The notes under the pieces are model-generated. The model did not search any database. It saw nothing but the letters and a program-made list of their open reading frames with translations, and had not been told where the DNA came from. From NCBI GenBank assembly GCA_002269645.1, contig NIVC01003666.1, forward strand, positions 20,071-84,070: a stretch of 64,000 nucleotides of DNA, given 5' to 3'. This document shows positions 12,005 to 34,711 of this stretch, one piece after another. A program made the position numbers and the translations under genes. Numbering within the stretch: position 1 is the stretch's first letter; each line of letters starts with the position of its first letter. Origin of the DNA: Macrostomum lignano. Taxonomy: Eukaryota.

Positions 12005-12397
12005 ATCATGAAGTACTTCCGTTCGTTAAACAACTTCCTTGGCCTGGCCGCACTGGACAGCGTGTTCGTGAACTCCTCAATCCAGTACATCCGGCTGCAG
12101 CACACCTGGAAGCTAATTAAGAACGGCAAAGATAATAAGTTCCTCGAACAGGTGCAAGAGCTAGTCAGCAATGGCAACACAATGCGGCAGTACGATGAGT
12201 TATTGCGCACACTGGACACGGCCTGCGTGCCAAACCTGCGCTACCATCTCAGCCTCATCTTCCGGCTATTGGAAATCAACAGGGTCAAAGGCGACCAGCA
12301 GCAACAGCAGCAGCAACTTACTACCGGCAGGACGACCGCGTTAACCACAGCCGAGGCCGATGCCACCGTTATGATTCCGTTCTTCTGCTACCGACAG
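12005..12397 (+). CDS. Sos: SOS-like exon: CDC25 core and helical hairpin
   Basis: LNNFLG...NSSIQYIRLQHTW...CVP. Acceptor cccag, donor CAG|GTTCGC. Confidence 0.92.
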
Positions 12398-12409
12398 GTT
12401 CGCTTACAC

Positions 12410-15400
12410 TGTCTCCCCCACTCTGGATAAGGACTGTCTCCCCCACTCTGGATAAGGATTGTCTCCCCCACTCTGGATAAGGACTGTCTCCCCCACTCTG
12501 GATAAGGACTGTCTCCCCCACTCTGGATAAGGACTGTCTCCCCCACTCTGGATAAGGACTGTCTCCCCCACTCTGGATAAGGACTGTCTCCCCCACTCTA
12601 GATAAGGACTGTCTCCCCCACTCTGGATAAGGACTGTCTCCCCCACTCTGGATAAGGAATGTCTTCCCCACTCTGGATAAGGATTGTCTCCCCCACTCTG
12701 GATAAGGACTGTCTCCCCCACTCTGGATAAGGATTGTCTCCCCCACTCTGGATAAGGACTGTCTCCCCCACTCTGGATAAGGACTGTCTCCCCCACTCTG
12801 GATAAGGATTGTCTGCCCCCACTCTGGATAAGGAATGTCTGCCCCCACTCTGGATAAAGACTGTCTCCCCCACTCTGGATAAGGATTGTCTCCCCCACTC
12901 TGGATAAGGACTGTCTCCCCCACTCTGGATAAGGAATGTCTCCCCCACTCTGGATAAGGATTGTCTCCCCCACTCTGGATAAGGACTGTCTCCCCCACTC
13001 TGGATAAGGATTGTCTCCCCCACTCTGGATAAGGACTGTCTCCCCCACTCTGGATAAGGACTGTCTCCCCCACTCTGGATAAGGATTGTCTGCCCCCACT
13101 CTGGATAAGGACTGTCTCCCCCACTCTGGATAAGGACTGTCTCCCCCACTCTGGATAAGGACTGTCTCCCCCACTCTGGATAAGGACTGTCTCCCCCACT
13201 CTGGATAAGGACTGTCTCCCCCACTCTGGATAAGGACTGTCTCCCCCACTCTGGATAAGGACTGTCTCCCCCACTCTGGATAAGGACTGTCTCCCCCACT
13301 CTGGATAAGGACTGTCTCCCCCACTCTGGATAAGGACTGTCTCCCCCACTCTGGATAAGGACTGTCTCCCCCACTCTGGATAAGGACTGTCTCCCCCACT
13401 CTGGATAAGGACTGTCTCCCCCACTCTGAATAAGGAATGTCTCCCCCACTCTGGATAAGGACTGTCTCCCCCACTCTGGATAAGGACTGTCTCCCCCACT
13501 CTGGATAAGGAATGTCTGCCCCCACTCTGGATAAGGATTGTCTCCCCCACTCTGGATAAGGATTGTCTGCCCCACTCTGGATAAGGACTGTCTCCCCCAC
13601 TCTGGATAAGGATTGTCTCCCCCACTCTGGATAAGGACTGTCACCCCCACTCTGGATAAGGACTGTCTCCCCCACTCTGGATAAGGATTGTCTGCCCCCA
13701 CTCTGGATAAGGAATGTCTGCCCCCACTCTGGATAAAGACTGTCTACCCCACTCTGGATAAGGATTGTCTCCCCCACTCTGGATAAGGACTGTCTCCCCC
13801 ACTCTGGATAAGGAATGTCTCCCCCACTCTGGATAAGGATTGTCTCCCCCACTCTGGATAAGGAATGTCTGCCCCCACTCTGGATAAGGATTGTCTCCCC
13901 CACTCTGGATAAGGATTGTCTCCCCCACTCTGGATAAGGACTGTCTCCCCCACTCTGGATAAGGAATGTCTGCCCCCACTCTAGATAAGGACTGTCTCCC
14001 CCACTCTGGATAAGGACTGTCTCCCCCACTCTGGATAAGGATTGTCTGCCCCCACTCTGGATAAGGAATGTCTGCCCCCACTCTGGATAAAGACTGTCTC
14101 CCCCACTCTGGATAAGGATTGTCTCCCCCACTCTGGATAAGGACTGTCTCCCCCACTCTGGATAAGGACTGTCTCCCCCACTCTGGATAAGGATTGTCTG
14201 CCCCCACTCTGGATAAGGAATGTCTGCCCCCACTCTGGATAAGGATTGTCTCCCCCACTCTGGATAAGGATTGTCTGCCCCCCCCCACTCTGGATAAGGA
14301 ATGTCTGCCCCACTCTGGATAAGGACTGTCTCCCCCACCCTGGATAAGGACTGTCTCCCCCACTCTGGATAAGGAATGTCTCCTCCACTCTGGATAAGGA
14401 TTTTCTGCCCCCACTCTGGATAAGGATTGTCTCCCCCACTCTGGATAAGGATTGTCTGCCCCCACTCTGGATAAGGACTGTCTGCCCCCACTCTGGATAA
14501 GGATTGTCTCCCCCACTCTGGATAAGGATTGTCTGCCCCCCCCACTCTGGATAAGGAATGTCTGCCCCACTCTGGATAAGGACTGTCTCCTCCACTCTGG
14601 ATAAGGATTGTCTGCCCCCACTCTGGATAAGGATTGTCTGCCCCCACTCTGGATAAGGATTGTCTCCCCCACTCTGGATAAGGACTGTCTGCCCCCCCCA
14701 CTCTGGATAAGGATTGTCTGCCCCCACTCTGGATAAGGATTGTCTCCCCCACTCTGGATAAGGATTGTCTGCCCCCCCACTCTGGATAAGGAATGTCTGC
14801 CCCACTCTGGATAAGGACTGTCTCCCCCACCCTGGATAAGGACTTTCTCCCCCACTCTGGATAAGGATTGTCTCCCCCACTCTGGATAAGGATTTTCTGC
14901 CCCCACTCTGGATAAGGATTGTCTCCCCCACTCTGGATAAGGACTGTCTCCCCCACCCTGGATAAGGACTGTCTCCCCCACTCTGGATAAGGAATGTCTC
15001 CTCCACTCTGGATAAGGATTGTCTCCCCCACTCTGGATAAGGATTGTCTCCCCCACTCTGGATAAGGAATGTCTCCCCCACTCTGGATAAGGATTGCCCC
15101 CCCCACTTCGGGTAAAGACCCAGTTACTATGGATAAAGACCAATGGCTGCGGATAAAGAATCATGGCTATGGATTGAAACTCATGGCTATGGATTGAAAC
15201 TCATGGCTATGGATAAAGACCCCTGACTATGGATAAAGACCCAGTTACTATGAATAAGGACTGTCTCCCCCACTCTGGATAAGGACTGTCTCCCCCACTC
15301 TGGATAAGGACTGTCTCCCCCACTCTGGATAAGGATTGTCTCCCCCACTCTGGATAAGGACTGTCTCCCCCACTCTGGATAAGGACTGTCTCCCCCACTC

Positions 15401-17350
15401 TGGATAAGGACTGTCTCCCCCACTCTGGATAAGGACTGTCTCCCCCACTCTGGATAAGGACTGTCTCCCCCACTCTGGATAAGGACTGTCTCCCCCACTC
15501 TGAATAAGGAATGTCTCCCCCACTCTGGATAAGGATTGTCTCCCCCACTCTGGATAAGGACTGTCTCCCCCACTCTGGATAAGGAATGTCTGCCCCCACT
15601 CTGGATAAGGATTGTCTCCCCCACTCTGGATAAGGATTGTCTGCCCCACTCTGGATAAGGACTGTCTCCCCCAATCTGGATAAGGATTGTCTCCCCCACT
15701 CTGGATAAGGACTGTCTCCCCCACTCTGGATAAGGACTGTCTCCCCCACTCTGGATAAGGATTGTCTGCCCCCACTCTGGATAAGGAATGTCTGCCCCCA
15801 CTCTGGATAAAGACTGTCTCCCCCACTCTGGATAAGGATTGTCTCCCCCACTCTGGATAAGGACTGTCTCCCCCACTCTGGATAAGGAATGTCTCCCCCA
15901 CTCTGGATAAGGATTGTCTCCCCCACTCTGGATAAGGAATGTCTGCCCCCACTCTGGATAAGGATTGTCTCCCCCACTCTGGATAAGGATTGTCTCCCCC
16001 ACTCTGGATAAGGACTGTCTCCCCCACTCTGGATAAGGAATGTCTGCCCCCACTCTGGATAAGGACTGTCTCCCCCACTCTGGATAAGGACTGTCTCCCC
16101 CACTCTGGATAAGGATTGTCTGCCCCCACTCTGGATAAGGAATGTCTGCCCCCACTCTGGATAAAGACTGTCTCCCCCACTCTGGATAAGGATTGTCTCC
16201 CCCACTCTGGATAAGGACTGTCTCCCCCACTCTGGATAAGGATTGTCTGCCCCCACTCTGGATAAGGATTGTCTGCCCCCACTCTGGATAAGGAATGTCT
16301 GCCCCCACTCTGGATAAGGATTGTCTCCCCCACTCTGGATAAGGATTGTCTGCCCCCCCCCACTCTGGATAAGGAATGTCTGCCCCACTCTGGATAAGGA
16401 CTGTCTCCCCCACCCTGGATAAGGACTGTCTCCCCCACTCTGGATAAGGAATGTCTCCTCCACTCTGGATAAGGATTTTCTGCCCCCACTCTGGATAAGG
16501 ATTGTCTCCCCCACTCTGGATAAGGATTGTCTGCCCCCACTCTGGATAAGGACTGTCTGCCCCCACTCTGGATAAGGATTGTCTCCCCCACTCTGGATAA
16601 GGATTGTCTGCCCCCCCCCCACTCTGGATAAGGAATGTCTGCCCCACTCTGGATAAGGACTGTCTCCTCCACTCTGGATAAGGATTGTCTGCCCCCACTC
16701 TGGATAAGGATTGTCTGCCCCCACTCTGGATAAGGATTGTCTCCCCCACTCTGGATAAGGACTGTCTGCCCCCCCCCCACTCTGGATAAGGATTGTCTGC
16801 CCCCACTCTGGATAAGGATTGTCTCCCCCACTCTGGATAAGGATTGTCTGCCCCCCCACTCTGGATAAGGAATGTCTGCCCCACTCTGGATAAGGACTGT
16901 CTCCCCCACCCTGGATAAGGACTGTCTCCCCCACTCTGGATAAGGAATGTCTCCTCCACTCTGGATAAGGATTTTCTGCCCCCACTCTGGATAAGGATTG
17001 TCTCCCCCACTCTGGATAAGGATTGTCTGCCCCCACTCTGGATAAGGACTGTCTGCCCCCCCACACTCTGGATAAGGAATGTCTGCCCCCACTCTGGATA
17101 AGGATTGTCTCCCCCACTCTGGATAAGGATTGTCTCCCCCACTCTGGATAAGGAATGTCTCCCCCACTCTGGATAAGGATTGCCCCCCCCACTTCGGGTA
17201 AAGACCCAGTTACTATGGATAAAGACCAATGGCTGCGGATAAAGAATCATGGCTATGGATTGAAACTCATGGCTATGGATTGAAACTCATGGCTATGGAT
17301 AAAGACCCCTGACTATGGATAAAGACCCAGTTACTATGAATAAGGACTGT
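12410..17350. repeat. 25-bp minisatellite, about 180 copies, containing a ~2.08-kb tandem duplication
   Basis: Unit CTCTGGATAAGGA(C/T/A)TGTCT(C/G)CCCCA. An identical terminal block occurs at about 15095..15262 and 17180..17350. Confidence 0.97.
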
Positions 17351-17440
17351 CCCGCTGCGTATAAAGCCCCAAACTTTCTTTTAGTCAGTCCGTTTTAGTC
17401 TCACTAACAGCACTGCCTGTTTCGATGACGTCACCCGCAG

Positions 17441-17963
17441 GTCGCAGAGCGCATAGACGAGCTGCTCAAAGCCAAGGACACTCGCTATCAGCTGCGCGAA
17501 GAGCCATCAATCCAAGAATTCGTCCGCGACATCAACCCGATGCGCGACCTGGAACTGGAAGAGGTTGACGACACTAACCAGAACCAGCGCCTATTGGATA
17601 ACATATTCTATCGAATGAGCAACGAGCTGGAGCCCAAGGACGCCGACGAAGACTCGCTGAAGCGATCGGGCGCCAGGCGGTTCTCTTCTGAGGCGCTCCG
17701 CTCCCCGACTGTCAACGGCGGCGGCAGCGGAGGCGGCGTTGGCGGCGGCGGCAAATCGGCGAAGAAATCGTCAGCTGGCGGAGGCGGCGGCGCCAGACTG
17801 ACCTCTGCGCCGTTTATCCAGAGCAGCTCCAGGCCGACATCGCCTCTGCGAGATGCTCAGCAGCAGCCGCCGACGCCTCATCAAATTGTGCACTCCGGCA
17901 AGTCTAGCGCCGGAGGCAGCTCGGGTCTGACGTCACCGAATGGACCGATTGCGCAATCGCCGA
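17441..17963 (+). CDS. Sos: SOS-like exon: CDC25 end and start of disordered tail
   Basis: VAERIDELL...YQLREEPSIQEFVRDINPM matches SOS VAEITGEIQ...YCLRVESDIKRFFENLNPM. Donor A|GTGAGT. Confidence 0.92.
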
Positions 17964-18559
17964 GTGAGTAGCTGGGTCACGTGATGCGGTTTGTAATTCG
18001 ATTGCTAACTAAATTAGTTACTGGATATAAAAGCTATCGCATCTTAGCTACTAAATAGTAGCGAGAAACGGATGGGGAACCAATTCAATAGAGCCTGCAA
18101 TTCGCTGGTAGTTGAAAAATCGACAAAGAACTTGTTTCTAAGGAAGTTTCCGTATTGATAATTCTCTTCTAGACTAATTTTCATTTAAAATCGTTTCGCA
18201 AAGTGAATAAGATTGCCTATTTTATCCTTCCTCGCAGGATTCTTTCGCTTCGGTACGTTGCCAATAAAAAAATCCCTTTTAAACCAATACAAACCGTTCT
18301 TTAATGTCGGGTCTCTTATTACGTTATTAATCGATTTTTATAGATTTCTAAACCACTAAATTACACTTATAAGTTAACTAATATTTAAAATAATGTATAG
18401 GTAATATTAATTCGCTCTTTAACTATTGTTTCAATATTCAAGGATCCAGTTGTAAGGGCAAGTTAAGGGCAAGTTTAGGATTGTGTGATAAACTCCGTTT
18501 GCGTATACCCAACTTCAAATGCGTAATGGTGTCTGAGAGCGGGACAATGCAAGTGTCCG

Positions 18560-20172
18560 GGAGTGTCTGGGAAAGTCTATGGGAGTGTCTGGGAAGGTCT
18601 ATGGGACTGTCTGGGAAAGTCTATGGGACTGTCTGGGAAAGTCTATGGGGCTGTCTGGGAAAGTCTATGGGAGTGTCTGGGAAAGTCTATGGGACTGTCT
18701 GGGAAAGTCTATGGGAGTGTCTGGGAAAGTCTATGGGAGTGTCTGGGAAAGTCTATGGGAGTGTCTGGGAAAGTCTATGGGAGTGTCTGGGAAAGTCTAT
18801 GGGACTGTCTGGGAAAGTCTATGGGACTGTCTGGGAAAGTCTATGGGACTGTCTGGGAAAGTCTATGGGAGTGTCTGGGAAAGTCTATGGGACTGTCTGG
18901 GAAAGTCTATGGGAATGTCTGGGAAAGTCTATGGGAATGTCTGGGAGAGTGTTCGGCAGTGTCTATGGGAGTGTCTGAAAGAGTATCTATAGGAGTGTCT
19001 GGAAGAGTATCCATAGGAGTGTCTGAAAGAGTATCTATAGGAGTGTCTGGAAGAGTATCTATAGGAGTGTCTGGAAGAGTATCTATAGGAGTGTCTGGGA
19101 GAGTATCTATAGGAGTGTCTAGGAGAGTATCTATAGGAGTGTCCATGAGAGTACGAGTATCTATAGGAGTGTCTTGGAGAGTATCTATAGCAGTGTCTGG
19201 GAGAGTATCTATAGGAGTGTCTGGGAGAGTATCTATAGGAGTGTCTGGGAGAGTATCTATAGGAGTATCTGGAAGAGTATCTATAGGAGTGTCGGGGAGA
19301 GTATCTATAGGAGTGTCTGGAAGAGTATCTATAGGAGTGTCGGGGAGAGTATCTATAGGAGTGTCTGGAAGAGTATCTATAGGAGTGTCGGGGAGAGTAT
19401 CTATGAGTGTCTAGGAGAGTATCTATAGGAGTGTCCATGAGAGTACGAGTATCTATAGGAGTGTCTGGGAGAGTTTCTTTAGGAGTGTCTGGAAGAGTAT
19501 CTATAGGAGTGTCTGGGAGAGTATCTATAGGAGTGTCTGGGAGAGTATCTATAGGAGTGTCTGGGAGAGTATCTATAGGAGTGTCTGGGAGAGTATCTAT
19601 AGGAGTGTCTGGGAGAGTATCTATAGGAGTGTCTGGGAGAGTATCTATAGGAGTGTCTGGGAGAGTATCTATAGGAGTGTCTGGGAGAGTATCTATAGGA
19701 GTGTCTGGGAGAGTATCTATAGGAGTGTCTGGGAGAGTTTCTTTAGGAGTGTCTGGAAGAGTATCTATAGGAGTGTCTGGGAGAGTATCTATAGGAGTGT
19801 CTGGGAGAGTATCTATAGGAGTGTCTGGGAGAGTATCTATAGGAGTGTCTGGGAGAGTATCTATAGGAGTGTCTGGGAGAGTATCTATAGGAGTGTCTGG
19901 GAGAGTATCTATAGGAGTGTCGGGGAGAGTATCTATAGGAGTGTCTGGGAGAGTATCTATAGGAGTGTCGGGGAGAGTATCTATAGGAGTGTCTGGGAGA
20001 GTATCTATAGGAGTGTCTGGAAGAGTATCTATAGGAGTGTCTGGGAGAGTATCTATAGGAGTGTCGGGGAGAGTATCTATAGGAGTGTCGGGGAGAGTTT
20101 CTATAGGAGTGTCTGGGAGAGTATCTATAGGAGTGTCTGGGAGAGTGTTCGGCAGTGTCTATGGGAGTGTCG
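18560..20172. repeat. Compound 22-bp then 24-bp minisatellite
   Basis: GAGTGTCTGGGAAAGTCTATGG up to about 18960, then GAGTGTCTGGGAGAGTATCTATAG. Confidence 0.95.
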
Positions 20173-20632
20173 GGGAATGTGGCTACAATCATGAAGCTCC
20201 CTAATAGATTGACTCGCAGGTCAGGGGCAGCTGTATTGGCCTCAGTAGGACAGGGCATCAATCAGACAACACTACTGCGCATGTCCCATTCCTGTGACTT
20301 AAGTGATTTTTCTAATTAACAAGAAATCCATCCAATCCATTCATTGTTTTGCTTGCCTGTCCCAAATGTGTTTTGCATGGCACTTGTTGCAGTAAAGTAT
20401 GAAAAATATTAGAATTGCCATGTACTGCTAGGAGCCTGCTGTGAGATTGTTTAAACGAATCAGTGTTCCGTTTTGATGGGGCCAGCATAGTTTGACTGTC
20501 TATGCATCGCAATCGAGCATGCTGCTCGCTGTCTCGTACAAATAGTGTTTTTCTCTATTGTTAATATTTACCTACATGACTAACCCAAGTGACTGACCGT
20601 GCTCTCCCTTTATTTCTGCATTCAAATTTCAG

Positions 20633-20665
20633 TAGTTGAAGACCTGACTCGGCAGGACAGTGCAG
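20633..20665 (+). CDS. Sos: Candidate 33-nt symmetric micro-exon of SOS-like gene (IVEDLTRQDSA)
   Basis: Pyrimidine tract plus CAG/TAG tandem acceptor, donor CAG|GTAAAA, phase 1-1, no stop. Confidence 0.6.
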
Positions 20666-20821
20666 GTAAAAAAACCGAAGCGCCAGAATTTGTGTTATTG
20701 CGATTTTTCTGCTCGATTGTTTTTCATTTTCTCTAACTACTGCTACTATTGTGTCGGATATCAGTAGCTCATGTCAATCATAAAATGATATAATAATCTG
20801 CATTTATGTTTGAAATTGCAG

Positions 20822-21195
20822 ACCATTCTCGCAGCATCTCAGACCCCGTGCCGGCGGCAGTTGGCGCCGCCGTCGTCTCTGGCGGCGGCAGCGGCAGCCC
20901 GGCAGCAGCGCCGGCGGCTGGAGGCGGAGGCGTCCTGGCCAGCCACAGCAACAGCAACAGCGGCAGCAGTCAGCTGCCTCCGCTGCCGCCCAGGCAGACG
21001 GCCGGTTTGAAGTCGGCAGCGGCCGCTGTAAAATCGGCCGCCGTTGCGACAGCCACTGCGACGGCGGCAGCGGCGTCGACGTCAACCGGAGCGGCGCCGC
21101 CTCTGCCGCCCCGAGCTCGCAAGTCGGCTCCGCCGCCGTCGTTGCCGCCCAGAACTTCATTGCGCAGCAGTTCGGTCAGCAATCCGACTCAATAG
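20822..21195 (+). CDS. Sos: SOS-like terminal exon with SH3-binding PxxPxR motifs
   Basis: PPLPPRQ, PPLPPRAR and PSLPPRT are class II Grb2-SH3-type motifs. Acceptor ttgcag, stop TAG at 21193..21195. Confidence 0.88.
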
Positions 21196-21606
21196 GGATT
21201 ATTTTCTATCCTTATATTTCCCCTGTTGATTTTGTTTCCCGCGTCCTTCATTAATCCGCTTTTTGCTACCTACCTCCTTGTCAGTAGTCTGTGCGGCTTA
21301 TGTTAAACTATTGTTATTAGAAAGTTTGTAATAATAATTTGAATTCCAGTAAAAAATTGAATGAGTCTGTGTTTTTATAAATTCTCAATCCCCTGCTTAG
21401 TTTCTATTGCTCTGATAATTGCCTGTGCCGATTGGCCTGCTCCCTGGAAACTGCATTAGCTCTGTAGCTCAGCATTACACAATTGTGAGCTGTTGGATCT
21501 TTGGTATCGAATATTTGCAATATTTGCTTCGCATTGTTGTCTTGTTGCTTTATAACTCCAGTTTTTGCGTTTGTATCTGGGTGAGATTGACATGGTTGGG
21601 GGGGGG

Positions 21607-22284
21607 GTGAGACTTCTGAGTCTCTATGCCAGTAAATGGTGAGATTTCCGAGTCTCTATGCAGTAAAGGGTGAGATTTTCAAGGAGTCTATGTCAATAAG
21701 AGGTGAGATTTCTGAGTCTCTATGCCAGTTAAGGGTGAGATTTCCGAGTCTCTATGCCAATAAGGGGTGAGATTTCCGAGTCTCTATGCCAGTAAAGGGT
21801 GAGATTTCCGAGTATCTATGCCAATAAGGGGTGAGATTTCCGAGTCTCTATGCCAGTAAAGGGTGAGATTTCCGAGTCTCTATGCCAATAAGGGGTGAGA
21901 TTTCCGAGTCTGTGCCAGTAAAGGGTGAGATTTCCGAGTCTCTATGCCAGTAAAGGGTGAGATTTCCGAGTATCTATACCAATAAGGGGTGAGATTTCCG
22001 AGTCTGTGCCAGTAAAGGGTGAGATTTCCGAGTCTCTATGCCAATAAGGGGTGAGATTTCTGAGTCTCTATGCCAGTAAAGGGTGAGATTTCCGAGTCTC
22101 TGTGCCAGTAAAGGGTGAGATTTCCGAGTCTCTATGCCAATAAGGGGTGAGATTTCTGAGTCTCTATGCCAGTAAAGGGTGAGATTTCCGAGTCTCTGTG
22201 CCAATAAGGGGTGAGATTTCTGAGTCTCTATGCTAGTAAAAGATGAGATTTCCGAGTCTCTATGCCAGTAAAGGGTGAGATTTC
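21607..22284. repeat. 32-bp minisatellite with alternating variants
   Basis: GGGTGAGATTTCCGAGTCTCTATGCC(AGTAAA/AATAAG). Confidence 0.94.
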
Positions 22285-22969
22285 GATTTTTCATGGTTAA
22301 TTATCCAGCAGACTGCACAGTCCTTGTAATTAGTGTTTATCCCAGCTTGCATGTTTGTTATGATATTTGTGCATAACAGAAAAATATTGGTCAAATTGTA
22401 GAATCTGTGCATTCGTTTAAAGCTGCTAAATAGTTTGCAGAGCATATTGCTAATGTACCACTAGCGGGAGTTTCAGTTATTGCATATGTTTCGATGTGTT
22501 ACATCTGGCTATCAATTGATAATGCATATGCTTGTGCTTGTTTAGCAATGCAGGTCTTGTATGTGCATTTTTCAACTTTAGAAATACTTGTGTATATGTA
22601 TACATATATTTACTGCAGATCGATAATAACCCTAAAGTCTGATCTTTCTATTTTTGTCCGATATCTGTACATATATTTGTTGTATAAATACAAATTATTA
22701 TAAATATATTTACTTACAAATACAAACTAAGATTTTAGCATATTTTCGTGGCCCTTTGGGCCTCTGTGTTTATGCTTGGTGATTAAATGTCGTGCCTGAT
22801 TTTTTTTTTGTTCGCTTTCAGTTACTTCTGTCAAATTAAATTTACAGTAGTGCTTAATACTATTGGATTGTCTGGGAGTGAGTATATGACAGTGTCTTTA
22901 ACGTGTCTGGGAGAGCATGTGGCAGTGTTGGAGAGTCTGCGAGTGTATGGGAGTTCCGACGGCTGTAAA

Positions 22970-23480
22970 GTGTCTGGGAAAGTGGGAGAGGCTCTGGCGG
23001 GTTTGCAGTGTCTGGGAGAGGCTCTAGCGGGTTTGCAGTGTCTGGGAGAGGCTCTGGCGGGTGTGAAGTGTCTGGGAGAGGCTCTGGCGGGTTTGCAGTG
23101 TCTGGGAGAGGCTCTGACGGGTGTGAAGTGTCCGGGAGAGGTTCTTCCAGGTGTGCAGTGTCCGGGAGAGGTTCTTCCAGGCTTCCAGGTGTGCTGTGTC
23201 CGGGAGAGGTCCTGGTGGGTGTGAAGTGTCTGGGAGAGGTTCTGGCGGGTGTGAAGTGTCTGGGAGAGGTTCTGGCGGGTGTGAAGTGTCTGGGAAAGGT
23301 TCTGGCGGGTGTGAAGTGTCTGAGAGAGGTTCTCACGGGTGTGAAGTGTCTGAGAGAGGTTCTCACGGGTGTGAAGTGTCTGGGAGAGGTTCTGACGGGT
23401 GTGAAGTGTCTGGGAGAGGTTCTCACGGGTGTGAAGTGTCTGGGAGAGGTTCTGACGGGTGTGAAGTGTCCGGGAGAGCG
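22970..23480. repeat. 30-bp minisatellite bracketed by 38-bp direct repeats
   Basis: Unit GTGAAGTGTCTGGGAGAGGTTCTGGCGGGT. Flanks at 22923..22960 and 23486..23523. Confidence 0.92.
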
Positions 23481-23806
23481 TCTGACAGTGTTGTAGAGTC
23501 TGCGAGTGTATGGGTGTTCCGACCTACTTGAAGTGTTTGCTAAGCTGAAGTTTCAGATGGCTATTAAAAAATCCAATATCATCATTTTGCGAGCGCAGAT
23601 GAAAAAATCCAATCAAAACGGATGGAATGCAAATGCGAGTCAATGCATTTTTTTATTGTAAGTTTTGTCATACAAAAAACTCCGATAAAGAAAAGCAAAT
23701 ATGAAAAAAAAAGAAAAAATCTCACCGCTAAACCCACCTGTGCCGACGCGATACAGCAGGATCACTCATCAATATTCTCTTATTGTTAATACTCACGGAA
23801 ACTCAC

Positions 23807-24541
23807 CCTGCAGGTAATAGTTGATGATGCATTTGATCCCACTGCTGCTTTGCCTGGTCACCTGGCACTGCTGAAAGCCGGTGACGTCACTGCTAATCTC
23901 GCACTTGCCAATCAGGTCGTCTGCAGATGAAGTCATAGTTGTAGACAGTGATTATTAAAATGTGTCGCTATACCACTTGGAGCTGCTGGCCCAGGTGTGG
24001 TTCCAAATCACCGGTTTACTGCCGCAGGTGTCTGAAACGGGTAAATGAGTTTACAGAAAAATAGATTATACAGTAACTGTATATTATCGCTATTTGAATT
24101 CAACTTTTTAGACCAGCAAACTTAGACTCCCAGCGTGCTCAAGGCAACTGAACGATAAACGCGGTCTAATTCTTTGCTGGGGATGGTTTTGGCCATAGAC
24201 TATAAAACGGTAGACCAAACTAAGTGCCTGCATGGTTCTCACTCATGACGAATTTTGTCTTGCAGATTAGCTCGAGGCCCCTGTTAACTTGCACAAAGGG
24301 GTCACTTGACTCCGATAGGCAGTCTAATCCTGTCCCATTCAAAATGATGAAAACTGGCTGTACACCCGCGAGACCTGACAGCAGCTGCAGAGCGGTGAGG
24401 ACTAGAAGGGAACTAGCATATCCTGTAACTCGATAAAAGATAGTCTCCTGGGCTGAGAGTCTTGCATAGGCGCTTGGAGGCCAGATACAAAAGTCATTCG
24501 TATGCAGAACTGAAGCTTCTTACATCCTTGTTGCGCTGCAT
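23807..24541 (-). CDS. Signal peptide plus single C2 domain protein; frameshifted as assembled (assembly error or pseudogene)
   Basis: Exons 24243..24422 and 23807..24031 (GT-AG, phase 1), with a possible first exon 24524..24541. C2 motifs LDCLSESSDPFVQV, CKTKFV, PVIWNHTW, ITVYNYDF..ADDLIG are present. In-frame TAA TAA at 23952..23957 lies between two compensating small indels. Confidence 0.72.
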
Positions 24542-24607
24542 CGGTCAGTGGTTGGCGGTTTGGCCCAATCATAAACAGGTAGCGAAAGCTGGGGAATTAC
24601 AGCAACC

Positions 24608-25540
24608 ATCTGAGGAATGTTTCAAAGCCTATCTGAGGCGCATTTCAGGGTCTATCTGAGGCGCATTTCAGGATCTATCTGAGGGGCATTTCAGGGTCTA
24701 TCTGAGGCGCATTTCAGGATCTATCTGAGGGGCATTTCAGGGTCTATCTGAGGCGCATTTCAGGGTCTATCTGAGGCGCATTTCAGGATCTATCTGAGGC
24801 GCATTTCAGGATCTATCTGAGGCGCATTTCAGGGTCTATCTGAGGCGCATTTCAGGATCTATCTGAGGGGCATTTCAGGGTCTATCTGAGGCGCATTTCG
24901 GGGTCTATCTGAGGCTCATTAAAGGGTCTATCTGAGGCTCATTTCAGGGTCTATCTGAGGGGCATATCAGAGTCTATCTGAGAGGCATTTCAGGGTCTAT
25001 CTGAGGCGCATTTCAGGATCTATCTGAGGCGCATTTCAGGGCTATCTGAGGCTCATTTAAGGGTCTATCTTAGGCTCATTTCAGGGTCTATCTGAGGCTC
25101 ATTTCAGGGTCTATCTGAGGCTCATTTCAGGGTCTATCTGAGGCTCATTTCAGGGTCTATCTGAGGCTCATTAAAGGGTCTATCTTAGGCTCATTAAAGG
25201 GTCTATCTTAGGCTCATTAAAGGGTCTATCTTAGGCTCATTAAAGGGTCTATCTTAGGCTCATTAAAGGGTCTATCTGGGGCTCATTAAAGGGTCTATCT
25301 GAGGCTCATTTCAGGGTCTATCTGAGGCTCATTAAAGGGTCTATCTTAGGCTCATTAAAGGGTCTATCTGAAAGGCATTTCAGGGTCTATCTGAGGCTCA
25401 TTTCAGGGTCTATCTGAGGCTCATTAAAGGGTCTATCTGGGGCTCATTGCAGGGTCTATCTGGGGCTCATTAAAGGGTCTATCTGAGGCTCTTTAAAGGG
25501 TCTATCTTAGGCTCATTAAAGGGTCTATCTGATGCTCATT
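24608..25540. repeat. 23-bp minisatellite
   Basis: Unit TTTCAGGGTCTATCTGAGGC(G/T)CA. Confidence 0.94.
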
Positions 25541-25969
25541 TCTGCTTAAATTTCGAAATTAGACCACCAATCAACCTCATATTGCCGTTTTCCTGAAATG
25601 AAAATTGACACATTTAAACTCATCTTTCCCATTCTAATAAATTATGGACGCGCGATTCCATCTTCCATTGCGATTTCCAGGAAATAGAAAAATAACAGCC
25701 ATAACCAGTGAGACCGAAATGTTTCTAAAGAACATTTCGGATGCTGGTAATTCCAGCTAATGGGAACTGTGGGATTTATGAGTTAATGTTTCAACTTGCT
25801 TGTCTCTCACCCAGTTTACTTTGCTGGCATATTTCCGTAACTAAAAAAACAGCTTTTACAGCACCAGCGCCCATCCTTTCATTCATTCACACTGCGCATT
25901 CGTGACTAATGAAAGGTACTGCTGTTAATCAGTTGAGTCAGACTGAAGTGCAGACACTTCACAACACTC

Positions 25970-27285
25970 CCACGGACACTCTCCCAGACACTCCCATAGA
26001 CACTCCCATAGACACTCCCATAGACACTCCCATAGACACTCCCATAGACACGCTTCTAGACACTCCTATAGACACTCGCATAGATACTCCCATAGACACT
26101 CCCATAGACACTCTTCTAGACACTCCCATAGACACTCCTATAGACACTCTTCTAGACACTCCCATAGACACTCCTATAGACACTCGCATAGATACTCCCA
26201 TAGACACTCACATAGACACTCTTCTAGACACTCCCATAGACACTCCTATAGACACTCTTCTAGACACTCCCATAGACACTCCCATAGACACTCCCATAGA
26301 CACTCTTCTAGACACTCCCATAGACACTCCATAGACACTCCCATAGACACGCTTCTAGACACTCCCATAGACACTCTCATAGACACGCTTCTAGACACTC
26401 CCATAGACACTCCTATAGACACTCGCATAGATACTCCCATAGACACTCCCATAGACACTCTTCTAGACACTCCCATAGACACTCCTATAGGCACTCTTCT
26501 AGACACTCCCATAGACACTCCCATAGACACTCTTCTAGACACTCCCATAGACACTCCTATAGACACTCCTATAGACACTCCTATAGACACTCCTATAGAC
26601 ACTCCTATAGACACTCCATAGACACTCCCATAGACACTCCTATAGACAATTCCATAGACACTCCTATAGACAATTCCATAGACACTCCCATAGACACTCC
26701 TATAGACACTCCCATAGACACTCCTATAGACACTCCCATAGACACTCCTATAGACACTCCCATAGACACTCCTATAGACACTCCTATAGACACTCCTATA
26801 GACACTCCCATAGACACTCCTATAGACAATTCCATAGACACTCCCATAGACACTCCCATAGACACTCCCATAGACACTCCTATAGACACTCCCATAGACA
26901 CTCCTATAGACACTCCCATAGACACTCCTATAGACAATTCCATAGACACTCCCATAGACACTCCCATAGACACTCCCATAGACACTCCTATAGACAATTC
27001 CATAGACACTCCCATAGACACTCCCATAGACACTCCCATAGACACTCCTATAGACACTCCTATAGACACTCCTATAGACACTCCCATAGACACTCCTATA
27101 GACAATTCCATAGACACTCCCATAGACACTCCCATAGACACTCCCATAGACACTCCTATAGACACTCCCATAGACACTCCCATAGACACTCCCATAGACA
27201 ATTCCATAGACACTCCCATAGACACTCCCATAGACACTCCTATAGACACTCTCCCAGGCACTCCTATAGACACTCCCACAGACAC
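25970..27285. repeat. 12-bp minisatellite (reverse-complement relative of 18560..20172)
   Basis: Unit AGACACTCC(C/T)AT. Confidence 0.95.
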
Positions 27286-27977
27286 TCTAATCGACACAAA
27301 ATACACCTGTTCAAAAACTGCAGTAGAAACAGCCAAAACTACCAAACAGTCACAGAAAGTGAACATAAACTCCAGATGAAAAATGCGCAATCTCAATGCA
27401 TACTACTTAAAGTGGGAACAAAATTATTTTTCTTATTCTGAAGACACGCCTCTTATTGTCTATTTAAGGCTACTACGTCGTTAGCGTGTCTGTCTGGGAG
27501 TGTGCCTGTTAGACGGCGTCTGTGAATATTATTTTGGCACTCTTAAGATGCACGCGTGGCCCATCTTTCTTTAACAATGCAAACAAAAGTTACATACCGT
27601 AGAAAGAAAGCATCAAAATTACTCGTAATACCAGCTCGTATCACGGTTTTTGGCCAAGGATTCCTCAGGAGTCAAGTGCTCTTGCACTAAAACATCATAC
27701 TCCTCAGGATGAAGGCCTCCCCCTAGTCCTCTGCTGCCGTCTTCGTTCCCAAAACCCTGCAACTTCATGCTTTTCTGTTTCTGTTCATATGCCCCCGAAG
27801 CTAGTATTCTGTTCATTAATTACTGTCCTAGGCAGAATTCGTGTCACCGTCTATTTCTGCTCATCCTGTGGACGCACTGCTGGGTCTCCTACTTCAGTAG
27901 CTTTATCTTGCCAGGGTAAGGGACTCTTGCAGTCTTATACATGGCTCTCATTGTAATAACACGCCTGTGCGTACTGA

Positions 27978-28591
<614 letters not shown>

Positions 28592-29069
28592 AAGGGGAGA
28601 AAGTCTATCCTAATTTAATCTTACAGTTGCCATGCCTGAGCACTGCTGATAAAAGAACAGGCCCACAGAAGGGCGTTAATTGGTCGATCTGTCGCAGCCG
28701 TACGCAGCTCTGTACATCAGTGTGGGCGGAGGCAGTAATTCAATTAGCCTCGTGCGCCAGATTAGGAAATCTATCGCACAGCCTTTGCCGTCATAAATGA
28801 TTTTCCTGGGCAATAGCGCCGCAGTTCCCCAATGCGCACGCAGGAAATCCGTGTCAGTCAGAACAGGGCCTGCAGCTCTGCATTATGAACTGGTCGTGCA
28901 GTTCAGTAAAAACTGCTCCATCACGTGCGAAAGTCCCTGCTTTACGTACAGTTAGAAATAACCACAGAATATCACCCAGAATATGAGCGTTTTCACTTCA
29001 TAGCTCGTACTTCTACTTTGGTTAATATTGTAAGAGCGTAATATTGTGTTGTCCGACTTAGTGTTTTGT

Positions 29070-30172
<1,103 letters not shown>

Positions 30173-30661
30173 CGGTCCGCACACCGGAGTGAATCGGGCA
30201 GCAAATCGAATCTCGGCCGGGGCAATCAAGCCGGACAGCTGCCAATCGCCTATCGCATTCCAAACTGCCCTTCAGCTTCTCCCAGAGAGCGGCAGTCAGG
30301 AAGCGACAGCGTGGAACAGCAGCGCCCCTCCATTCGGTCAGCCGGTCTCTGGCGGCCAATTCCCGCGCATGGTGGGCGGCTGACGGCAGTAATTACGCAT
30401 GCTAATTCCCCGCTGGCTCAGCGGACAGCCGCCCCCGCCCTGCGCCTCCCGGCCTGCTGCAATCCAATTCGATTGATTATTTGTCTGTCTTAAACTTTCT
30501 CTAGCTGGTATCCAGGACACTGAACTCGGGTTAGACTTGGATAGAGCATGCGCAGGATTCAATAGTGGCGGGGCCGTTGGTCTCTGAAATTGGGGAAGAA
30601 GGGACTCAGGAAATACAGCTTCCAACTAAAGTCTCAAAGATGATAGACTTGAAGATCTGGA

Positions 30662-30813
<152 letters not shown>

Positions 30814-31049
30814 GATAGGTATCGATAGGTAGTTGCACGTACTCTTTTGCACTACTTGAGTAGTCTGATTTTCGTTCGGCATGGCTGGTTCCAGCAGGTA
30901 GTTCCTCTGGATAAAAGCGCTTACCGCGCCCATTGGCTTTCCAGCTGCCTTAATCGTTTCCGGTGATCTTGTGTGCGTGCTTTCAGCTTGATTGGCTGCG
31001 GCAAGCAAGCTCGAAAGAGCTCGCTTCGCTCGCTCTTTCTCGCTATCTA

Positions 31050-31094
<45 letters not shown>

Positions 31095-31546
31095 ATCTGT
31101 CTATCTGCTTAGTTCAGAATACACTTCATGCTATCTGCAGCTCGTTGTATCCACTGTTGGCTGTTAACTCTTCTTCTCTCTTCTGTCTAAACGAGCAAAG
31201 ACGATCAAAGAAAGCGAACACCGCTTCACAATTCAAGCGAAAAGAAGTCAGGATGAAGGCTTGTGCGTCACTGAGATTTCCCGACTCGATGCGATTCAAT
31301 GGAACCGGACGCCCAAAGGATCTGGCAGGTTGCACGCTTCAGTTCAGCCGAAACTCGCTCGACTCACGCACGGCTGAGACTTGCAAGCTGAAACCGCCGC
31401 TTTGGTGACTGTGAGACAGGTGGATCATTGCCAGGATTTTTTAATTCTTCCCCACGCACATCCCAGAATAAACCCTCTGGCAGTCATTGCCACGCTGATC
31501 TCATAGTTAGAGATTTTCAAGTATTTCAGCTGAAATGATGTATCAA

Positions 31547-31957
<411 letters not shown>

Positions 31958-32690
31958 CAACCGTATTAGTGTCTATCATAGCTCCGGTTTAGCTCAGATG
32001 GCCCCAATCCCCCAACCTGAATGCAGGGAAGGACGCCAGCATTCGATTTGCCGTCCAGCCGTGCAAATTCTAAAAAATTGACTTATGCTGAAGCTGCGCC
32101 CAAGTAAAACCCACCGGCCACCGTGTTTATGACTGTATTGTGAAAGCCCAAATGTGCAGAGCAGCTGCCTTGCATGCTTGGGCTTTCGTCTTGCACTTTC
32201 AGTTGACCGAGTGGCCAGTTAGGGAAATATTTTTGCTTAATTTTAACCCCAGGTGTTCGCCTGAATTCCACGAGTTTGCTGGATTGACTCAAAACAAATT
32301 GGCACTTTTTTGTGCAGGAAATTTCTCTTTTTTCTCTGCTTCTTCTAAAAGTAACGCCTACATTGATAACGCATGAGTCTCGAGAGTTCGGGTGTAAAAA
32401 TTCGAGTACCTTGAGGAGCCTCGTAGATGGGTGGAGAGGGCCCGCAGCTCCCACGCTGTGCGCATTACATTCGCTAAGAATAAAATAATAGTCGTGACAG
32501 AGCAGTCAAAGCACAGACTGCTACACTGCCACGGCAGGGCAGGGCAGGTCAGTGGAGTCTTGCCGTCTTGTTGAAATTTGTAGCAACTTTTTAAACAGAA
32601 AAGCAGGAAATTATACGGCTCTGAGAAGAAGCAAGACAAAGGAAATCAGTTTAGCACAAGAAGCATCGAGTCGAAGATCTTTGGCACAGC

Positions 32691-33996
32691 ATGGCCGCCG
32701 CCGCCGCTGCACCGCAAGGCGTCCGACATGCTCTGCAGAGAAGCCGCAGCAGGTGCAGCAGCACCGGGGGCGGCCCAGGTGGTCGGCAGCTGGACGCTCT
32801 GGTGGAGGCTGACGAGTCGGAGCCACAGCAGCCGCCGCCGCTACCACCGACCGCGACGGCGCAGCAACCACGACGTCAGCATCGGCGGCGTCGGCAATCG
32901 ATTTTCAGCTTGAGTCGGCTGCGTCAGCTCTTGTCACTGCGACCGGCGCCGTTGCCACTGCCGCCGCCACAGCCTCCGCAGCCGCCGAAGCCGCAGCGCG
33001 CGCATCTTGCCGCGGTGCCAGCCAAGTGTCTTGGCGCCGTTCCGCTGTCGAGCGCCCGCCTCCTCCTGGCAGCGGCCTCCAATACCGCGGCCGAGTTTGT
33101 ACAGCAGCCAGTTGAGCAGCTGGTGGCAGCGGCCGCTGCGGCCAGGCGTCGACAGCGGAATTCGCTGGCTTCGACGGCGACAACTGCAGAAGGTTCTTCG
33201 GTGCTGCCAGTTGCCATGGTGACAGTGTCGGTCGGCGGTTTGACTGTACAGCCTCTAGAACAAAACGGTCCGTCACTGACAAGGTAATTCTCCCCTTCCT
33301 GTCGCAATATTGAATATTTAATCAGCACCCGAGATTATTAACTGAATGAGGTGAACAGGCGAGTGTCTGATAGGCTATTAACTATCAAGGTTACATTGTA
33401 TATCAGCTCAGTAACTATCAAGGTCAGAGAGTGTACAGAGAGTGTACATGCCTAAGGGTTAGAAAGTCAGGGGCCGCTGTACACCCTGCGTGAGCGTGTG
33501 TGTGAGTGCGTGTGTGTGAGTGCGTGTGTGTGAGTGCGTGCGTGTGAGTGCGTGTGTGTGAGTGCGTGTGTGTGAGTGCGTGTGTGTGAGTGCGTGTGTG
33601 TGAGTGTGTGTGTGTGAGTGAGTGCGTGTGTGAGTGCTCGGGAGTCAGCGGGATGGGCAGAGTTGTCTCAGCGGACAAAGTTACATCAGGCCAGTATGCA
33701 AATTATTAAATGGACAATCACCTTCAACCCAATAAACTTTCAGATTAACCCCAACTGGTTCATTAGCAGCCGCACCAGACAGCCGTGCGTCCTCCGCAGA
33801 CACCCAGCGCCACCCCATAGAGTCAGTCGTGTGCGCCTCTGTGCACCGCAGACTGCCTCGAATATTCTGCTGCGCTATTGTCGATAGCGACGCCACCGCC
33901 GCCTGTCACGCCTTCCTGTGCGCTCGGACTGATTCAGCCGACTGTCTGGTGCAGGCGGTGGCTCGGGTTTGCCATCTGTCAGCGGCCGGACCCTGA
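32691..33996 (+). CDS. PTB/PID-domain adaptor protein, 2 exons, 281 aa
   Basis: join(32691..33283,33744..33996), donor AG|GTAATT, acceptor tttcag, 846 nt in frame to TGA. AKCLGAVP...VTVSVGGLTV plus HPIESVVCASV...RIFCCAI...ACHAFLC...ADCLVQAV fits the PID-fold pattern (xKYLG, VSxxGI, CHVFxC). Confidence 0.78.
33488..33636. repeat. GTGAGTGCGTGT(GT) repeat in the PTB gene intron
   Basis: Direct reading. Confidence 0.9.
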
Positions 33997-34711
33997 TCAT
34001 TCTGAGTGCACCCCCGCGGAATTACCATAGAACTGCGTTCACTATACTATACGTTTTTGCGAGCAATCTCAGCCATGGCTTGTTTATTAAGCGAAAAATT
34101 TATTTGGTTCGTATATAAGAGACTGTCGGAGTTGGATGTTTGTCGCAACTGAGCCATCGGAGGAGGAGGAAAGAAAGAAGGGAAGAGGAAATGAATGGGC
34201 AGACAAGCTATGGCTGAGATTGCTCGCCCGTTGGATGAGTTTGGTTGAAAAAACGTGATAGTCTATGGTTCAAACCACCTCCTTCGTCGTATTGAAATCT
34301 ATGGGATGGATGAGTTTGCTTGCTCCTTGGCTGAGATAGCTCGCAAAAACCAATAGTAGCCATATACAAAAAAGGTTTATGCCATAGACAAGTAGCAGAC
34401 GCAGTCCCACACAGAGGCATGTGTTTTAGTCTATGGCTGAAACCCCAGAAGAAGTAGCGCTCGTAATTTGTCAATAGCTGATTTTTTTAAACAAATTATT
34501 TTGCCGATTTGTAATTTGTAATTTGTCCGACCAGTGCTTTATGAACTGGGCCTCAGAAGCGAGTTAAAAGGAATGCCCTTTCTAATAGCTAATAAAAAGT
34601 AAATAATTTTCAACTAAAGGTGTTTAGACCACAGAACTTGATCTCTACTTGATAGAATGACCGACTTAATTGGATTTATTGTCTGCGGTCAAATGCAGTC
34701 CTGTGGCAATG

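What the first reader, a model, noticed from the sequence alone, without database searches (positions are those of the whole stretch)
23807..24541. Hidden gene: signal peptide plus a lone perforin-type extracellular C2 domain
Seen, after correcting three small indels: MLVPLLVLTALQLLSGLAG-VQPVFIILNGTGLDCLSESSDPFVQVNRGLELICKTKFVMNTCGSKPVIWNHTWASSSKWYSDTFLIITVYNYDFISADDLIGKCEISSDVTGFQQCQVTRQSSSGIKCIINYYLQG. It has six Cys, two N-x-T sequons (NGT, NHT) and most Ca-binding acidic positions (one is Asn). Knowledge: C2 domains are nearly always cytosolic. Perforin is the classic secreted exception and has DDxLGxC-x12-C, versus DDLIGKC-x11-C here. Inference: a secreted, MACPF-less, Ca-dependent membrane-binding protein, such as an immune/defence opsonin or a partner subunit of a pore-former. 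It is invisible in the ORF track.
Basis: partly seen in the sequence, partly recalled or inferred. Interest (0 to 1): 0.78.

Follow-up and report, generated by a model that had tools for sequence, protein, structure and literature searches.

The report
Broken flatworm gene for secreted C2
The flatworm Macrostomum lignano really does carry a small two-exon gene that would encode a secreted, cysteine-rich protein made of one calcium/lipid-binding C2 domain, but three frameshifts break it in this assembly and it is not specifically perforin-like.

Summary
On the minus strand, ATG 24419 to TGA 23793, two exons are split by a 211-nt GT..AG intron. It scores 37.7 bits (E 2.5e-9) on Pfam C2; unrepaired pieces fall below threshold.

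The window is Macrostomum lignano Mlig_3_7 contig NIVC01003666.1, a PacBio/Pilon assembly of a neopolyploid genome.

An in-frame hydrophobic leader abuts the first C2 strand. Six Cys and two sequons fit a secreted lone C2.

"Perforin-type" is only weakly supported. The three C-terminal Cys align with perforin C496, C509 and C524. However, profile comparison gives 12% probability against perforin plus SmC2P1, versus 96% against small CAR-like C2 domains, and phmmer against PDB never lists perforin. No MACPF or other domain lies within about 10 kb.

As assembled the gene is dead (MLVPF*), while neighbouring genes are intact. I cannot tell a pseudogenised copy from residual long-read indels, because all three lesions read as missing bases next to short runs.

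No relative was found in any searchable collection, but these cover M. lignano poorly.

Interest is modest.

The parts
24423..24424 (-). AG acceptor (tcttttatcgagttacAG|GAT ATG) 3 nt upstream of the start codon. It is a possible spliced-leader trans-splice site.
   Evidence: Read from the sequence. SL trans-splicing affects 38.8% of M. lignano genes (PMC5730564). Use of this site is inferred, not shown.
24243..24419 (-). Exon 1. It holds the ATG (24419..24417), the signal-peptide-like leader and C2 strands 1-3 (..VQPVFIILNGTGLDCLSESSDPFVQVNRGLELICKTKFVM).
   Evidence: The exon ends in phase 1 at the donor A|GTGAGA. It joins exon 2 in frame to give ..FVM-N-TCGSKP.
24364..24419 (-). Predicted signal peptide MLVP-LLVLTALQLLSGLAG. 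The likely cleavage is SGLA|G or LAG|V.
   Evidence: Kyte-Doolittle 11-residue means are 2.1-2.6 over residues 1-5, then fall. The h-region is in the same frame as the C2 domain without any repair. SignalP was not available.
24408..24410 (-). Frameshift 1. The CCC run needs one more base (ATG CTA GTT CCC cTT CTA..). As assembled, the ORF reads MLVPF*.
24032..24242 (-). Intron, 211 nt, GT..AG with a pyrimidine-rich 3' end.
   Evidence: Codon log-odds is negative in all three frames.
23793..24031 (-). Exon 2. It holds C2 strands 4-8 and the three C-terminal Cys. It ends with stop TGA 23795..23793 unless the donor at 23806 is used.
23957..23960 (-). Frameshift 2. The TTTT run needs +1 (or -2) to read SDTF-LIITVYNYDF.
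   Evidence: Both repairs give 37.7 bits on PF00168.
23924..23926 (-). Frameshift 3, inside Ca-binding loop 3 (DFI[S]ADD). The +TC repair gives 37.7 bits and the -1 repair gives 33.8 bits.
   Evidence: The +2 reading matches plant CAR TVYDYDLLSADDKMG and the canonical D-x5-D spacing.
23886..24345 (-). Span of the Pfam C2 match (residues 26-109 of the repaired protein, profile 7-90/104), interrupted by the intron.
   Evidence: Coordinates are computed from the model.
23801..23806 (-). Consensus-like 5' splice site G|GTGAGT directly after ..YYLQ(G). If it is used, an unidentified further exon follows.
Evidence: Sequence. No convincing downstream exon was found.
23652..23657 (-). AATAAA, 136 nt after the TGA. 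It is the candidate poly(A) signal of a two-exon mRNA.

Best explanation
This is a real, lineage-specific, two-exon gene unit of Macrostomum lignano. Its product would be a 139-residue secreted protein: a cleavable signal peptide followed directly by one small C2 beta-sandwich, about 120 residues once the leader is removed.

Inferred mechanism of the intact form:
- It enters the ER, forms three disulfides from its six Cys, and may be glycosylated at N28 and N70.
- At extracellular or sea-water calcium levels, the acidic residues of loops 1 and 3 (D33, E37, D40, D92, D97, D98; N90 replaces one canonical Asp) bind Ca2+.
- Together with L36, F93 and I94, they then dock the domain on lipid membranes.

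In overall sequence it is a generic small single-C2 type. The perforin-like placement of three Cys is the only perforin-specific trait.

The copy in this window cannot make the protein, because three frameshifts end translation after MLVPF. I take it as most likely a decayed (pseudogenised) copy in a genome that holds most loci in about three copies.

Shown: the C2 homology, the exon structure, the frameshifts and the in-frame hydrophobic leader. Inferred: secretion, disulfides, Ca/lipid binding and pseudogene status.
For: - C2 identity is robust to how the lesions are repaired: 37.7, 33.8 and 37.7 bits, against 19.5 bits unrepaired. Mouse perforin C2 itself scores 43.4 on the same model.
- Codon usage is host-like only in the repaired frame.
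- The leader and the C2 domain share one exon and one frame.
- There are six Cys and two sequons.
- Four of the five canonical Ca ligands align with perforin D429/D435/D485/D491 and with the CAR proteins.
- It is a lone domain. There is no second copy in the window and no Pfam domain in minus-strand ORF pieces across most of 21039..34563 (33933..32649 not scanned).
- For pseudogene status: there are three disabling lesions in 416 nt. About 6 kb of neighbouring coding sequence is uninterrupted. The RasGEF profile is split exactly at position 79 across an intron, 7tm_1 matches 1-260 contiguously, and a 447-aa ORF is open.
- The assembly was polished with Illumina DNA and RNA-seq reads.
- No gene with its C-terminal ORF as product is on record in the gene index, whereas two nearby genes (447 aa and 65 aa) are.
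- About 85% of the genome is in three copies, which leaves room for one copy to decay.
Against: - All three lesions can be read as bases missing at or beside short runs (C3, T4, TC). This is the typical residual error of a Canu PacBio-CLR consensus.
- REAPR rates only 63.95% of Mlig_3_7 bases as error-free, and 93% of read pairs map to multiple loci.
- After repair there is no stop codon. The ATG, both splice sites, all six Cys and the C2 core are intact, which is cleaner than expected for a copy old enough to have collected three indels.
- No reads, transcripts or homeologous copies could be inspected.
- Secretion rests on hydropathy and composition only.
- One canonical Ca ligand is Asn, and frameshift 3 lies inside a Ca-binding loop, so Ca binding is uncertain.
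Confidence: 0.5

Rival explanations
1. The same gene, but intact and functional in the animal. On this reading the three frameshifts are residual long-read consensus errors (missing bases in short runs) that Pilon did not correct. The locus is then an unannotated, probably weakly or tissue-specifically expressed gene for a secreted C2 protein.
For: - The lesions sit at or beside the runs CCC, TTTT and TC, and all can be repaired by adding bases.
- The repaired ORF has no stop, and it keeps intact splice sites, ATG, Cys pairs and host-like codon usage.
- Mlig_3_7 is Canu PacBio plus Pilon only, with 63.95% error-free bases by REAPR. Not all mapped transcripts keep intact ORFs on it, and the genome is highly multi-mapping.
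- 0.7% indels is what an unpolished CLR patch would show (my own knowledge of such assemblies).
Against: - About 6 kb of coding sequence elsewhere in the same window has no frameshift.
- The 1.15-kb block is unique within the window, so short reads should anchor there.
- Lesion 3 is not in a homopolymer and needs two bases.
- An expressed gene should have been repaired by the RNA-seq polishing.
Confidence: 0.35
2. It is not a lone secreted protein. On this reading the exons belong to a larger product: upstream exons spliced at AG 24424/24423 and/or downstream exons from the donor at 23806. Alternatively, the hydrophobic stretch is a membrane anchor that holds a cytosolic C2 domain, as in synaptotagmin-like proteins.
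For: - A good acceptor lies just upstream of the ATG. Reading through it in frame 2 would remove the need for frameshift 1.
- A consensus-like donor, G|GTGAGT, follows the last C2 strand.
- C2 domains are overwhelmingly cytosolic (general knowledge).
Against: - No in-frame ATG-plus-donor combination exists in the 200 nt before the 24629..25542 minisatellite (my reading).
- No Pfam domain was found in neighbouring minus-strand pieces, although the C2 fragments themselves were also missed there, so sensitivity is low.
- The hydrophobic run is only about 15 residues. It ends in SGLAG-VQP and abuts beta-strand 1 with no linker, which fits a cleaved leader rather than an anchor.
- Six Cys and two sequons fit a luminal or extracellular domain.
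- AATAAA lies 136 nt after the TGA.
Confidence: 0.1
3. It is a chance resemblance produced by the reader's choice of 'corrections'.
For: The C2 hit appears only after the fragments are joined. The single fragments score nothing.
Against: - Five fragments are collinear with one HMM stretch at E 2.5e-9.
- The result is insensitive to how the lesions are repaired.
- The exon junction keeps the reading frame.
- The codon signal is frame-specific.
- hhalign gives 96% probability against independent C2 sequences.
Confidence: 0.01

Closest known systems
Small single-C2 Ca-dependent lipid-binding proteins: plant CAR proteins (PDB 5a52, 5a4x/At3g17980) and the C2 domain of an 'XYPPX repeat family protein' (9bkw)
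   Same: - They are the best sequence matches: phmmer E 6e-4 to 2e-3, 31-37% identity over their aligned stretches, and hhalign 96%, E 3.7e-9 over 65 columns.
- Loop 3 is nearly identical (TVYDYDLLSADDKMG against TVYNYDFISADDLIG).
- They have one C2 domain per protein.
   Different: - They are cytosolic plant or protist proteins without a leader (my own knowledge).
- They lack the GxC..C..C cysteines.
- They have Asp where this gene has N90.
Perforin-1 C2 domain (mouse, PDB 3nsj, 4y1s)
   Same: - It is an extracellular, disulfide-bonded C2 domain.
- The motif DDLLGSC-x12-C compares with DDLIGKC-x11-C here.
- MAFFT puts this gene's C104, C116 and C128 in the columns of perforin C496, C509 and C524.
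- Asp equivalents of D435, D485, D490 and D491 are present, and D429 has a likely equivalent (D33) offset by one residue.
   Different: - Perforin's C2 follows MACPF and EGF domains in one chain. Here a leader precedes it and no MACPF lies nearby.
- Overall similarity is weak: BLASTP matches 31 residues at 25 bits, hhalign gives 12% probability, and perforin is absent from the phmmer PDB list.
- D483 is Asn and D489 is Ala here.
- Of the membrane-inserting aromatics W427, Y430, Y486 and W488, only F93 (at the Y486 position) is kept.
- There is no C-terminal extension with a C533 partner.
SmC2P1, a 131-residue stand-alone 'C2 domain protein' of turbot (PDB 3w56/3w57)
   Same: - It is a stand-alone C2 protein that carries the perforin-type DDLLGVC-x12-C hairpin.
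- It shows that MACPF-less perforin-like C2 proteins exist.
- It is described as the closest structural relative of the perforin C2 (PMC10400287).
   Different: - It matches perforin at E 4e-12, but it matches this protein only at 16.9 bits over 31 residues.
- It is a vertebrate protein.
- Whether it has a signal peptide was not checked here.
Synaptotagmin C2A/C2B
   Same: It shares the generic C2 core (SDPYV, P-x-WN, V-x-D-x-D...D-x-x-G). phmmer gives E about 3e-3.
   Different: It has tandem C2 domains on a membrane anchor with a long linker, and it is cytosolic. It has no conserved cysteine set.

Membership tests
C2 domain (Pfam PF00168) | Profile-HMM score above the curated gathering threshold (22 bits) | tested here: met
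   The score is 37.7 bits, E 2.5e-9, over profile positions 7-90/104. It stays at 33.8-37.7 bits under alternative repairs. Without repair of exon 2 it falls to 19.5 bits.
C2 domain (Pfam PF00168) | Eight-stranded beta-sandwich fold | not testable with these tools
   Structure prediction and the search of protein representatives accept only sequences that are exact in the window. Eight strand-like segments can be read in the alignment, but that is inference.
C2 domain (Ca-dependent subclass) | Five acidic Ca ligands in loops 1 and 3 (Syt1 D172/D178/D230/D232/D238; perforin D429/D435/D483/D485/D491) | tested here: inconclusive
   Four of the five are present (D33 with a one-residue longer loop, D40, D92, D98). 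The D230/D483 position is N90. Frameshift 3 lies inside loop 3.
Perforin-type C2 (C2 of MACPF-EGF-C2 proteins) | C2 placed C-terminal to MACPF and EGF domains in the same polypeptide | tested here: not met
   The leader and C2 strand 1 share one exon. No Pfam hit was found in the scanned minus-strand ORF pieces between 21039 and 34563, but sensitivity for split exons is low.
Perforin-type C2 | Closer in sequence or profile to perforin and SmC2P1 than to other C2 domains | tested here: not met
   hhalign gives 12% probability and score 22.8 over 26 columns against perforin plus SmC2P1. It gives 96% and score 50.5 over 65 columns against CAR/XYPPX C2 domains. Perforin is absent from the 35 PDB hits at E<=10.
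Perforin-type C2 | Disulfide hairpin DDxLGxC-x12-C (mouse C496-C509) | tested here: inconclusive
   The Cys columns coincide in MAFFT for this protein, perforin and SmC2P1, and are absent from the CAR proteins. The spacing is 11, not 12. The disulfide itself cannot be shown. How common Cys is at these columns across all C2 domains was not measured.
Perforin-type C2 | Membrane-inserting aromatics W427, Y430, Y486, W488 | tested here: not met
   Only F93 aligns, at the Y486 position. The other positions are not aromatic. The list of residues is from my own knowledge of the perforin literature.
Secretory protein | Cleavable N-terminal signal peptide | tested here: inconclusive
   The h-region is about 15 residues with mean hydropathy above 2, followed by SGLAG-VQP. 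The start codon is separated from the h-region by frameshift 1. No SignalP-type predictor was available.
Pseudogene | Disabling lesions that are real in the genome and not assembly errors | not testable with these tools
   Three frameshifts are present in the assembly.

The most novel reading that the evidence does not exclude
Macrostomum (and perhaps other free-living flatworms) has a functional family of secreted, MACPF-less, disulfide-locked C2 proteins. On this reading they share the perforin/SmC2P1 cysteine hairpin and act outside the cell as Ca-dependent membrane binders, for example in gland secretions, defence or adhesion. This locus would then be either an intact member hidden by assembly indels or a dead copy of a live paralogue.
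Probability: 0.15. Interest if true: 0.55.

Novelty: new variant of a known kind. Interest (0 to 1): 0.3.

Why it matters
C2 domains work almost exclusively on the cytosolic face of membranes, and perforin is the textbook extracellular case. An invertebrate protein made only of a leader and a disulfide-rich C2 domain would add a second, independent extracellular use of the fold. It would also give a very small, tractable Ca/lipid-binding module to study.

The practical lesson here is different. The locus shows how short genes in the indel-prone, triplicated Mlig_3_7 assembly drop out of ORF- and TransDecoder-based annotation. Frameshift-tolerant profile scans can recover such genes, but they need read-level confirmation before being called genes.

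Tried and rejected
- Word-indexed search of 5.8 billion proteins with the repaired protein found nothing.
- The same search with a profile of 100 synthetic conservative variants, made to widen the 5-mer seeds (A1), found 46 candidates and none was significant.
- phmmer of the exact 55-aa exon-1 piece against 1.84 billion representatives gave 0 hits. A fragment of that length has little power.
- A scan of JGI metagenome contigs with back-translated peptides gave 268 pattern matches, none confirmed.
- I tried to reach the two homeologous loci through the neighbouring RasGEF gene. Its 471-aa exon has no match in the database, not even to itself. The database therefore holds few M. lignano proteins, and absence of C2 paralogues says little.
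- Exact look-up of the 47-aa C-terminal ORF found nothing on record.
- Rfam found nothing in the window.
- A Pfam scan of minus-strand ORF pieces found no MACPF or other neighbouring domain.
- I considered a tiny intron instead of frameshifts 2 and 3. I rejected it because the 11 codons between them (LIITVYNYDFI) are the best-conserved C2 strand.
- I considered an upstream coding exon spliced in at 24423. No ATG-plus-donor combination in the right phase exists before the minisatellite.
- Literature searches for Macrostomum plus C2 domain, and for secreted or extracellular C2 proteins, returned nothing relevant.

Full report
**Source.** The 447-aa ORF at 53076..54419(-) is recorded exactly once in the public gene index, on NCBI GCA_002269645.1, contig NIVC01003666.1 (84,070 bp). 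The locus returned with 10-kb flanks fixes the window as bases 20071..84070 of that contig. [quoted passage not shown] It was assembled from PacBio reads with Canu 1.4 and polished only with Pilon, using Illumina DNA and RNA-seq reads (PMC5730564). Tandem repeats cover 47% of the window. That matches the paper's account of a genome rich in simple and tandem repeats.

**Observation.** The feature lies on the minus strand. No ORF longer than 56 aa overlaps the gene on its own strand.

An explicit model has these parts:
- ATG at 24419
- exon 1 at 24419..24243
- a 211-nt GT..AG intron at 24242..24032
- exon 2 at 24031..23793

The exon junction keeps the frame (..FVM|N|TCGSKP..).

Three lesions break the frame:
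- a CCC run at 24410..24408, which needs +1
- a TTTT run at 23960..23957, which needs +1 or -2
- ATC|T|GCA at 23926..23924, which needs +2 or -1

**Is it more than chance?**
- The repaired protein matches Pfam C2 (PF00168) at 37.7 bits, E 2.5e-9, against a gathering cut-off of 22. It does so as one stretch that crosses the intron and two frameshifts.
- Alternative repairs give 33.8 to 37.7 bits. Leaving exon 2 unrepaired gives 19.5 bits, and the single pieces give nothing.
- Mouse perforin's own C2 scores 43.4 bits on the same model.
- A codon-usage log-odds trained on 1,597 codons of neighbouring genes is +16.5 bits in the repaired frame. It is -82 and -70 in the other two frames, and negative in every frame of the intron and the 3' flank.

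The C2 coding unit is real.

**Architecture.**
- The hydrophobic run LLVLTALQLLSGLAG is in the same frame and the same exon as the first C2 strands, without any repair. Only the four codons ATG-CTA-GTT-CCC are displaced, by frameshift 1.
- The run is about 15 residues long with mean hydropathy above 2. It ends in SGLAG-VQP and abuts strand 1. That fits a cleaved leader better than a membrane anchor.
- An AG acceptor lies 3 nt before the ATG. 38.8% of M. lignano genes are SL trans-spliced, so this is a candidate trans-splice site. That is inference.
- After ..YYLQ there is both a consensus-like donor (G|GTGAGT, 23806) and, on read-through, GEFP-TGA, with AATAAA 136 nt further on. I favour the two-exon reading, but the 3' end is not settled.
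- There is no second copy in the window.
- Pfam found nothing in the scanned minus-strand ORF pieces between 21039 and 34563. The C2 pieces were also missed in that scan, so a split MACPF could escape it.

**Which kind of C2?**
- phmmer against all PDB sequences lists 35 C2 chains at E<=10. The best are plant CAR proteins (5a52, E 6e-4; 5a4x), an XYPPX-repeat protein C2 (9bkw) and synaptotagmins. Perforin is not listed.
- I recovered the mouse perforin C2 sequence from 3nsj and part of the turbot SmC2P1 sequence from 3w56.
- BLASTP of the flatworm protein against perforin C2 aligns only 31 residues around DDLIGKC (25 bits). Against SmC2P1 it gives 16.9 bits.
- hhalign against a perforin plus SmC2P1 profile gives 12% probability over 26 columns. 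Against a CAR/XYPPX profile it gives 96%, E 3.7e-9, over 65 columns.
- Loop 3 (TVYNYDFISADDLIG) is almost the CAR sequence (TVYDYDLLSADDKMG). This also supports the +2 repair.
- What is perforin-like is the cysteine placement. In the MAFFT alignment, C104, C116 and C128 fall in the columns of perforin C496, C509 and C524, and the first two also match SmC2P1. The CAR proteins have no Cys there. My recollection of the UniProt annotation is that perforin's C496-C509 is a disulfide.

By overall similarity, however, the domain is a generic small C2, and membership of a perforin-type subfamily fails on domain context, profile similarity and the aromatic membrane-insertion residues.

**Calcium sites.** The perforin ligands named in PMC10400287 are D429, D435, D483, D485 and D491. 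The flatworm protein has D40, D92 and D98 at three of these positions. It has D33 one residue out of register, and N90 in place of D483. Ca-dependent lipid binding is plausible but not assured, and frameshift 3 sits inside loop 3.

**Gene, pseudogene or mis-assembly?**

As assembled, translation stops at MLVPF*.

For a real pseudogene:
- The other coding sequence in the window is uninterrupted. RasGEF_N and RasGEF match cleanly, with the domain split at profile position 79 across an intron. 7tm_1 matches 1-260 in one stretch. ORFs of 471 and 447 aa are open.
- The assembly was polished with DNA and RNA reads.
- No gene with its C-terminal ORF as product is on record in the gene index.
- About 85% of the genome is present in three copies that differ by about 2%, so one copy can decay freely.

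For mis-assembly:
- Each lesion can be repaired by adding bases at or beside a short run, which is the usual residue of a CLR consensus.
- REAPR calls only 63.95% of bases error-free, and 93% of read pairs multi-map.
- The repaired ORF is suspiciously clean. It has no stop, and the ATG, splice sites, all six Cys and the C2 core are intact.

I put a pseudogenised copy at about 0.5, an intact gene with assembly errors at about 0.35, and a different architecture at about 0.1. Reads over contig positions 43863-44489 would decide.

**Relatives.** None was found:
- the repaired protein in the 5.8-billion protein index
- a synthetic-variant profile made to widen seeding
- phmmer of the exact exon-1 piece against 1.84 billion representatives
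- JGI metagenome contigs

These negatives are weak. The neighbouring RasGEF exon finds nothing either, not even itself, so M. lignano is barely represented.

**Verdict.** 'Secreted lone C2' is the best-supported architecture. 'Perforin-type' rests only on a cysteine motif, and the broader tests contradict it. 'Hidden gene' may well be a dead copy or an assembly casualty. The locus is a modestly interesting lead, an unusual extracellular-looking C2 in a flatworm. It needs reads, transcripts and the homeologous copies before any functional claim.

Noticed in passing
window 1..64000: Tandem repeats (52 merged arrays, mostly minisatellites with 12-57 bp units) cover 47% of the window. The C2 unit sits in a 1.15-kb unique block between the arrays 22983..23478 and 24629..25542.
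   Followed up: partly
window 74..21195 (+): A multi-exon RasGEF-family gene. RasGEF_N is at 9481..9873. The RasGEF domain is split at profile position 79 between exons near 10581 and 12011. The introns are filled with minisatellites, for example a 25-bp unit repeated about 189 times at 12408..17193. The gene is convergent with the C2 unit. Its 471-aa first ORF has no match in the protein index.
   Followed up: partly
window 12408..17329: The large 25-bp array contains two copies of the same short 20-bp array (15113..15243 and 17199..17329). This suggests a segmental duplication of about 2.1 kb inside the array.
   Followed up: no
window 43003..44586 (-): An intronless rhodopsin-family GPCR (7tm_1, 161.8 bits, profile 1-260 contiguous) with a long Gly-rich C-terminal tail. 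The version starting at the ATG I chose is not on record as an annotated product.
   Followed up: partly
window 53076..54419 (-): An annotated 447-aa protein with a signal-peptide-like N-terminus and no Pfam domain. It is an orphan, and it is the protein that identified the contig.
   Followed up: partly
window 55504..55698 (-): An annotated 65-aa Cys-rich product (..CQTVDTACYFDHECCPGLVCDW..) with weak, sub-threshold Dickkopf_N-like similarity (20 bits). The open frame continues upstream into a 22-bp tandem array (55711..56761).
   Followed up: partly
window 50702..51618 (+): A reverse-transcriptase (RVT_1) fragment of a retroelement. It is split over two overlapping frames near 50980, so it is degraded or frameshifted.
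   Followed up: no
window 22920..22960 and 23483..23523: A 41-bp direct repeat (92.7% identity) flanks the 30-bp minisatellite 22983..23478 on both sides.
   Followed up: no
window 32691..33287 (+): A GC-rich 198-aa ORF (Ala/Pro/Arg-rich) that looks like the first exon of another plus-strand gene. It was not characterised.
   Followed up: no
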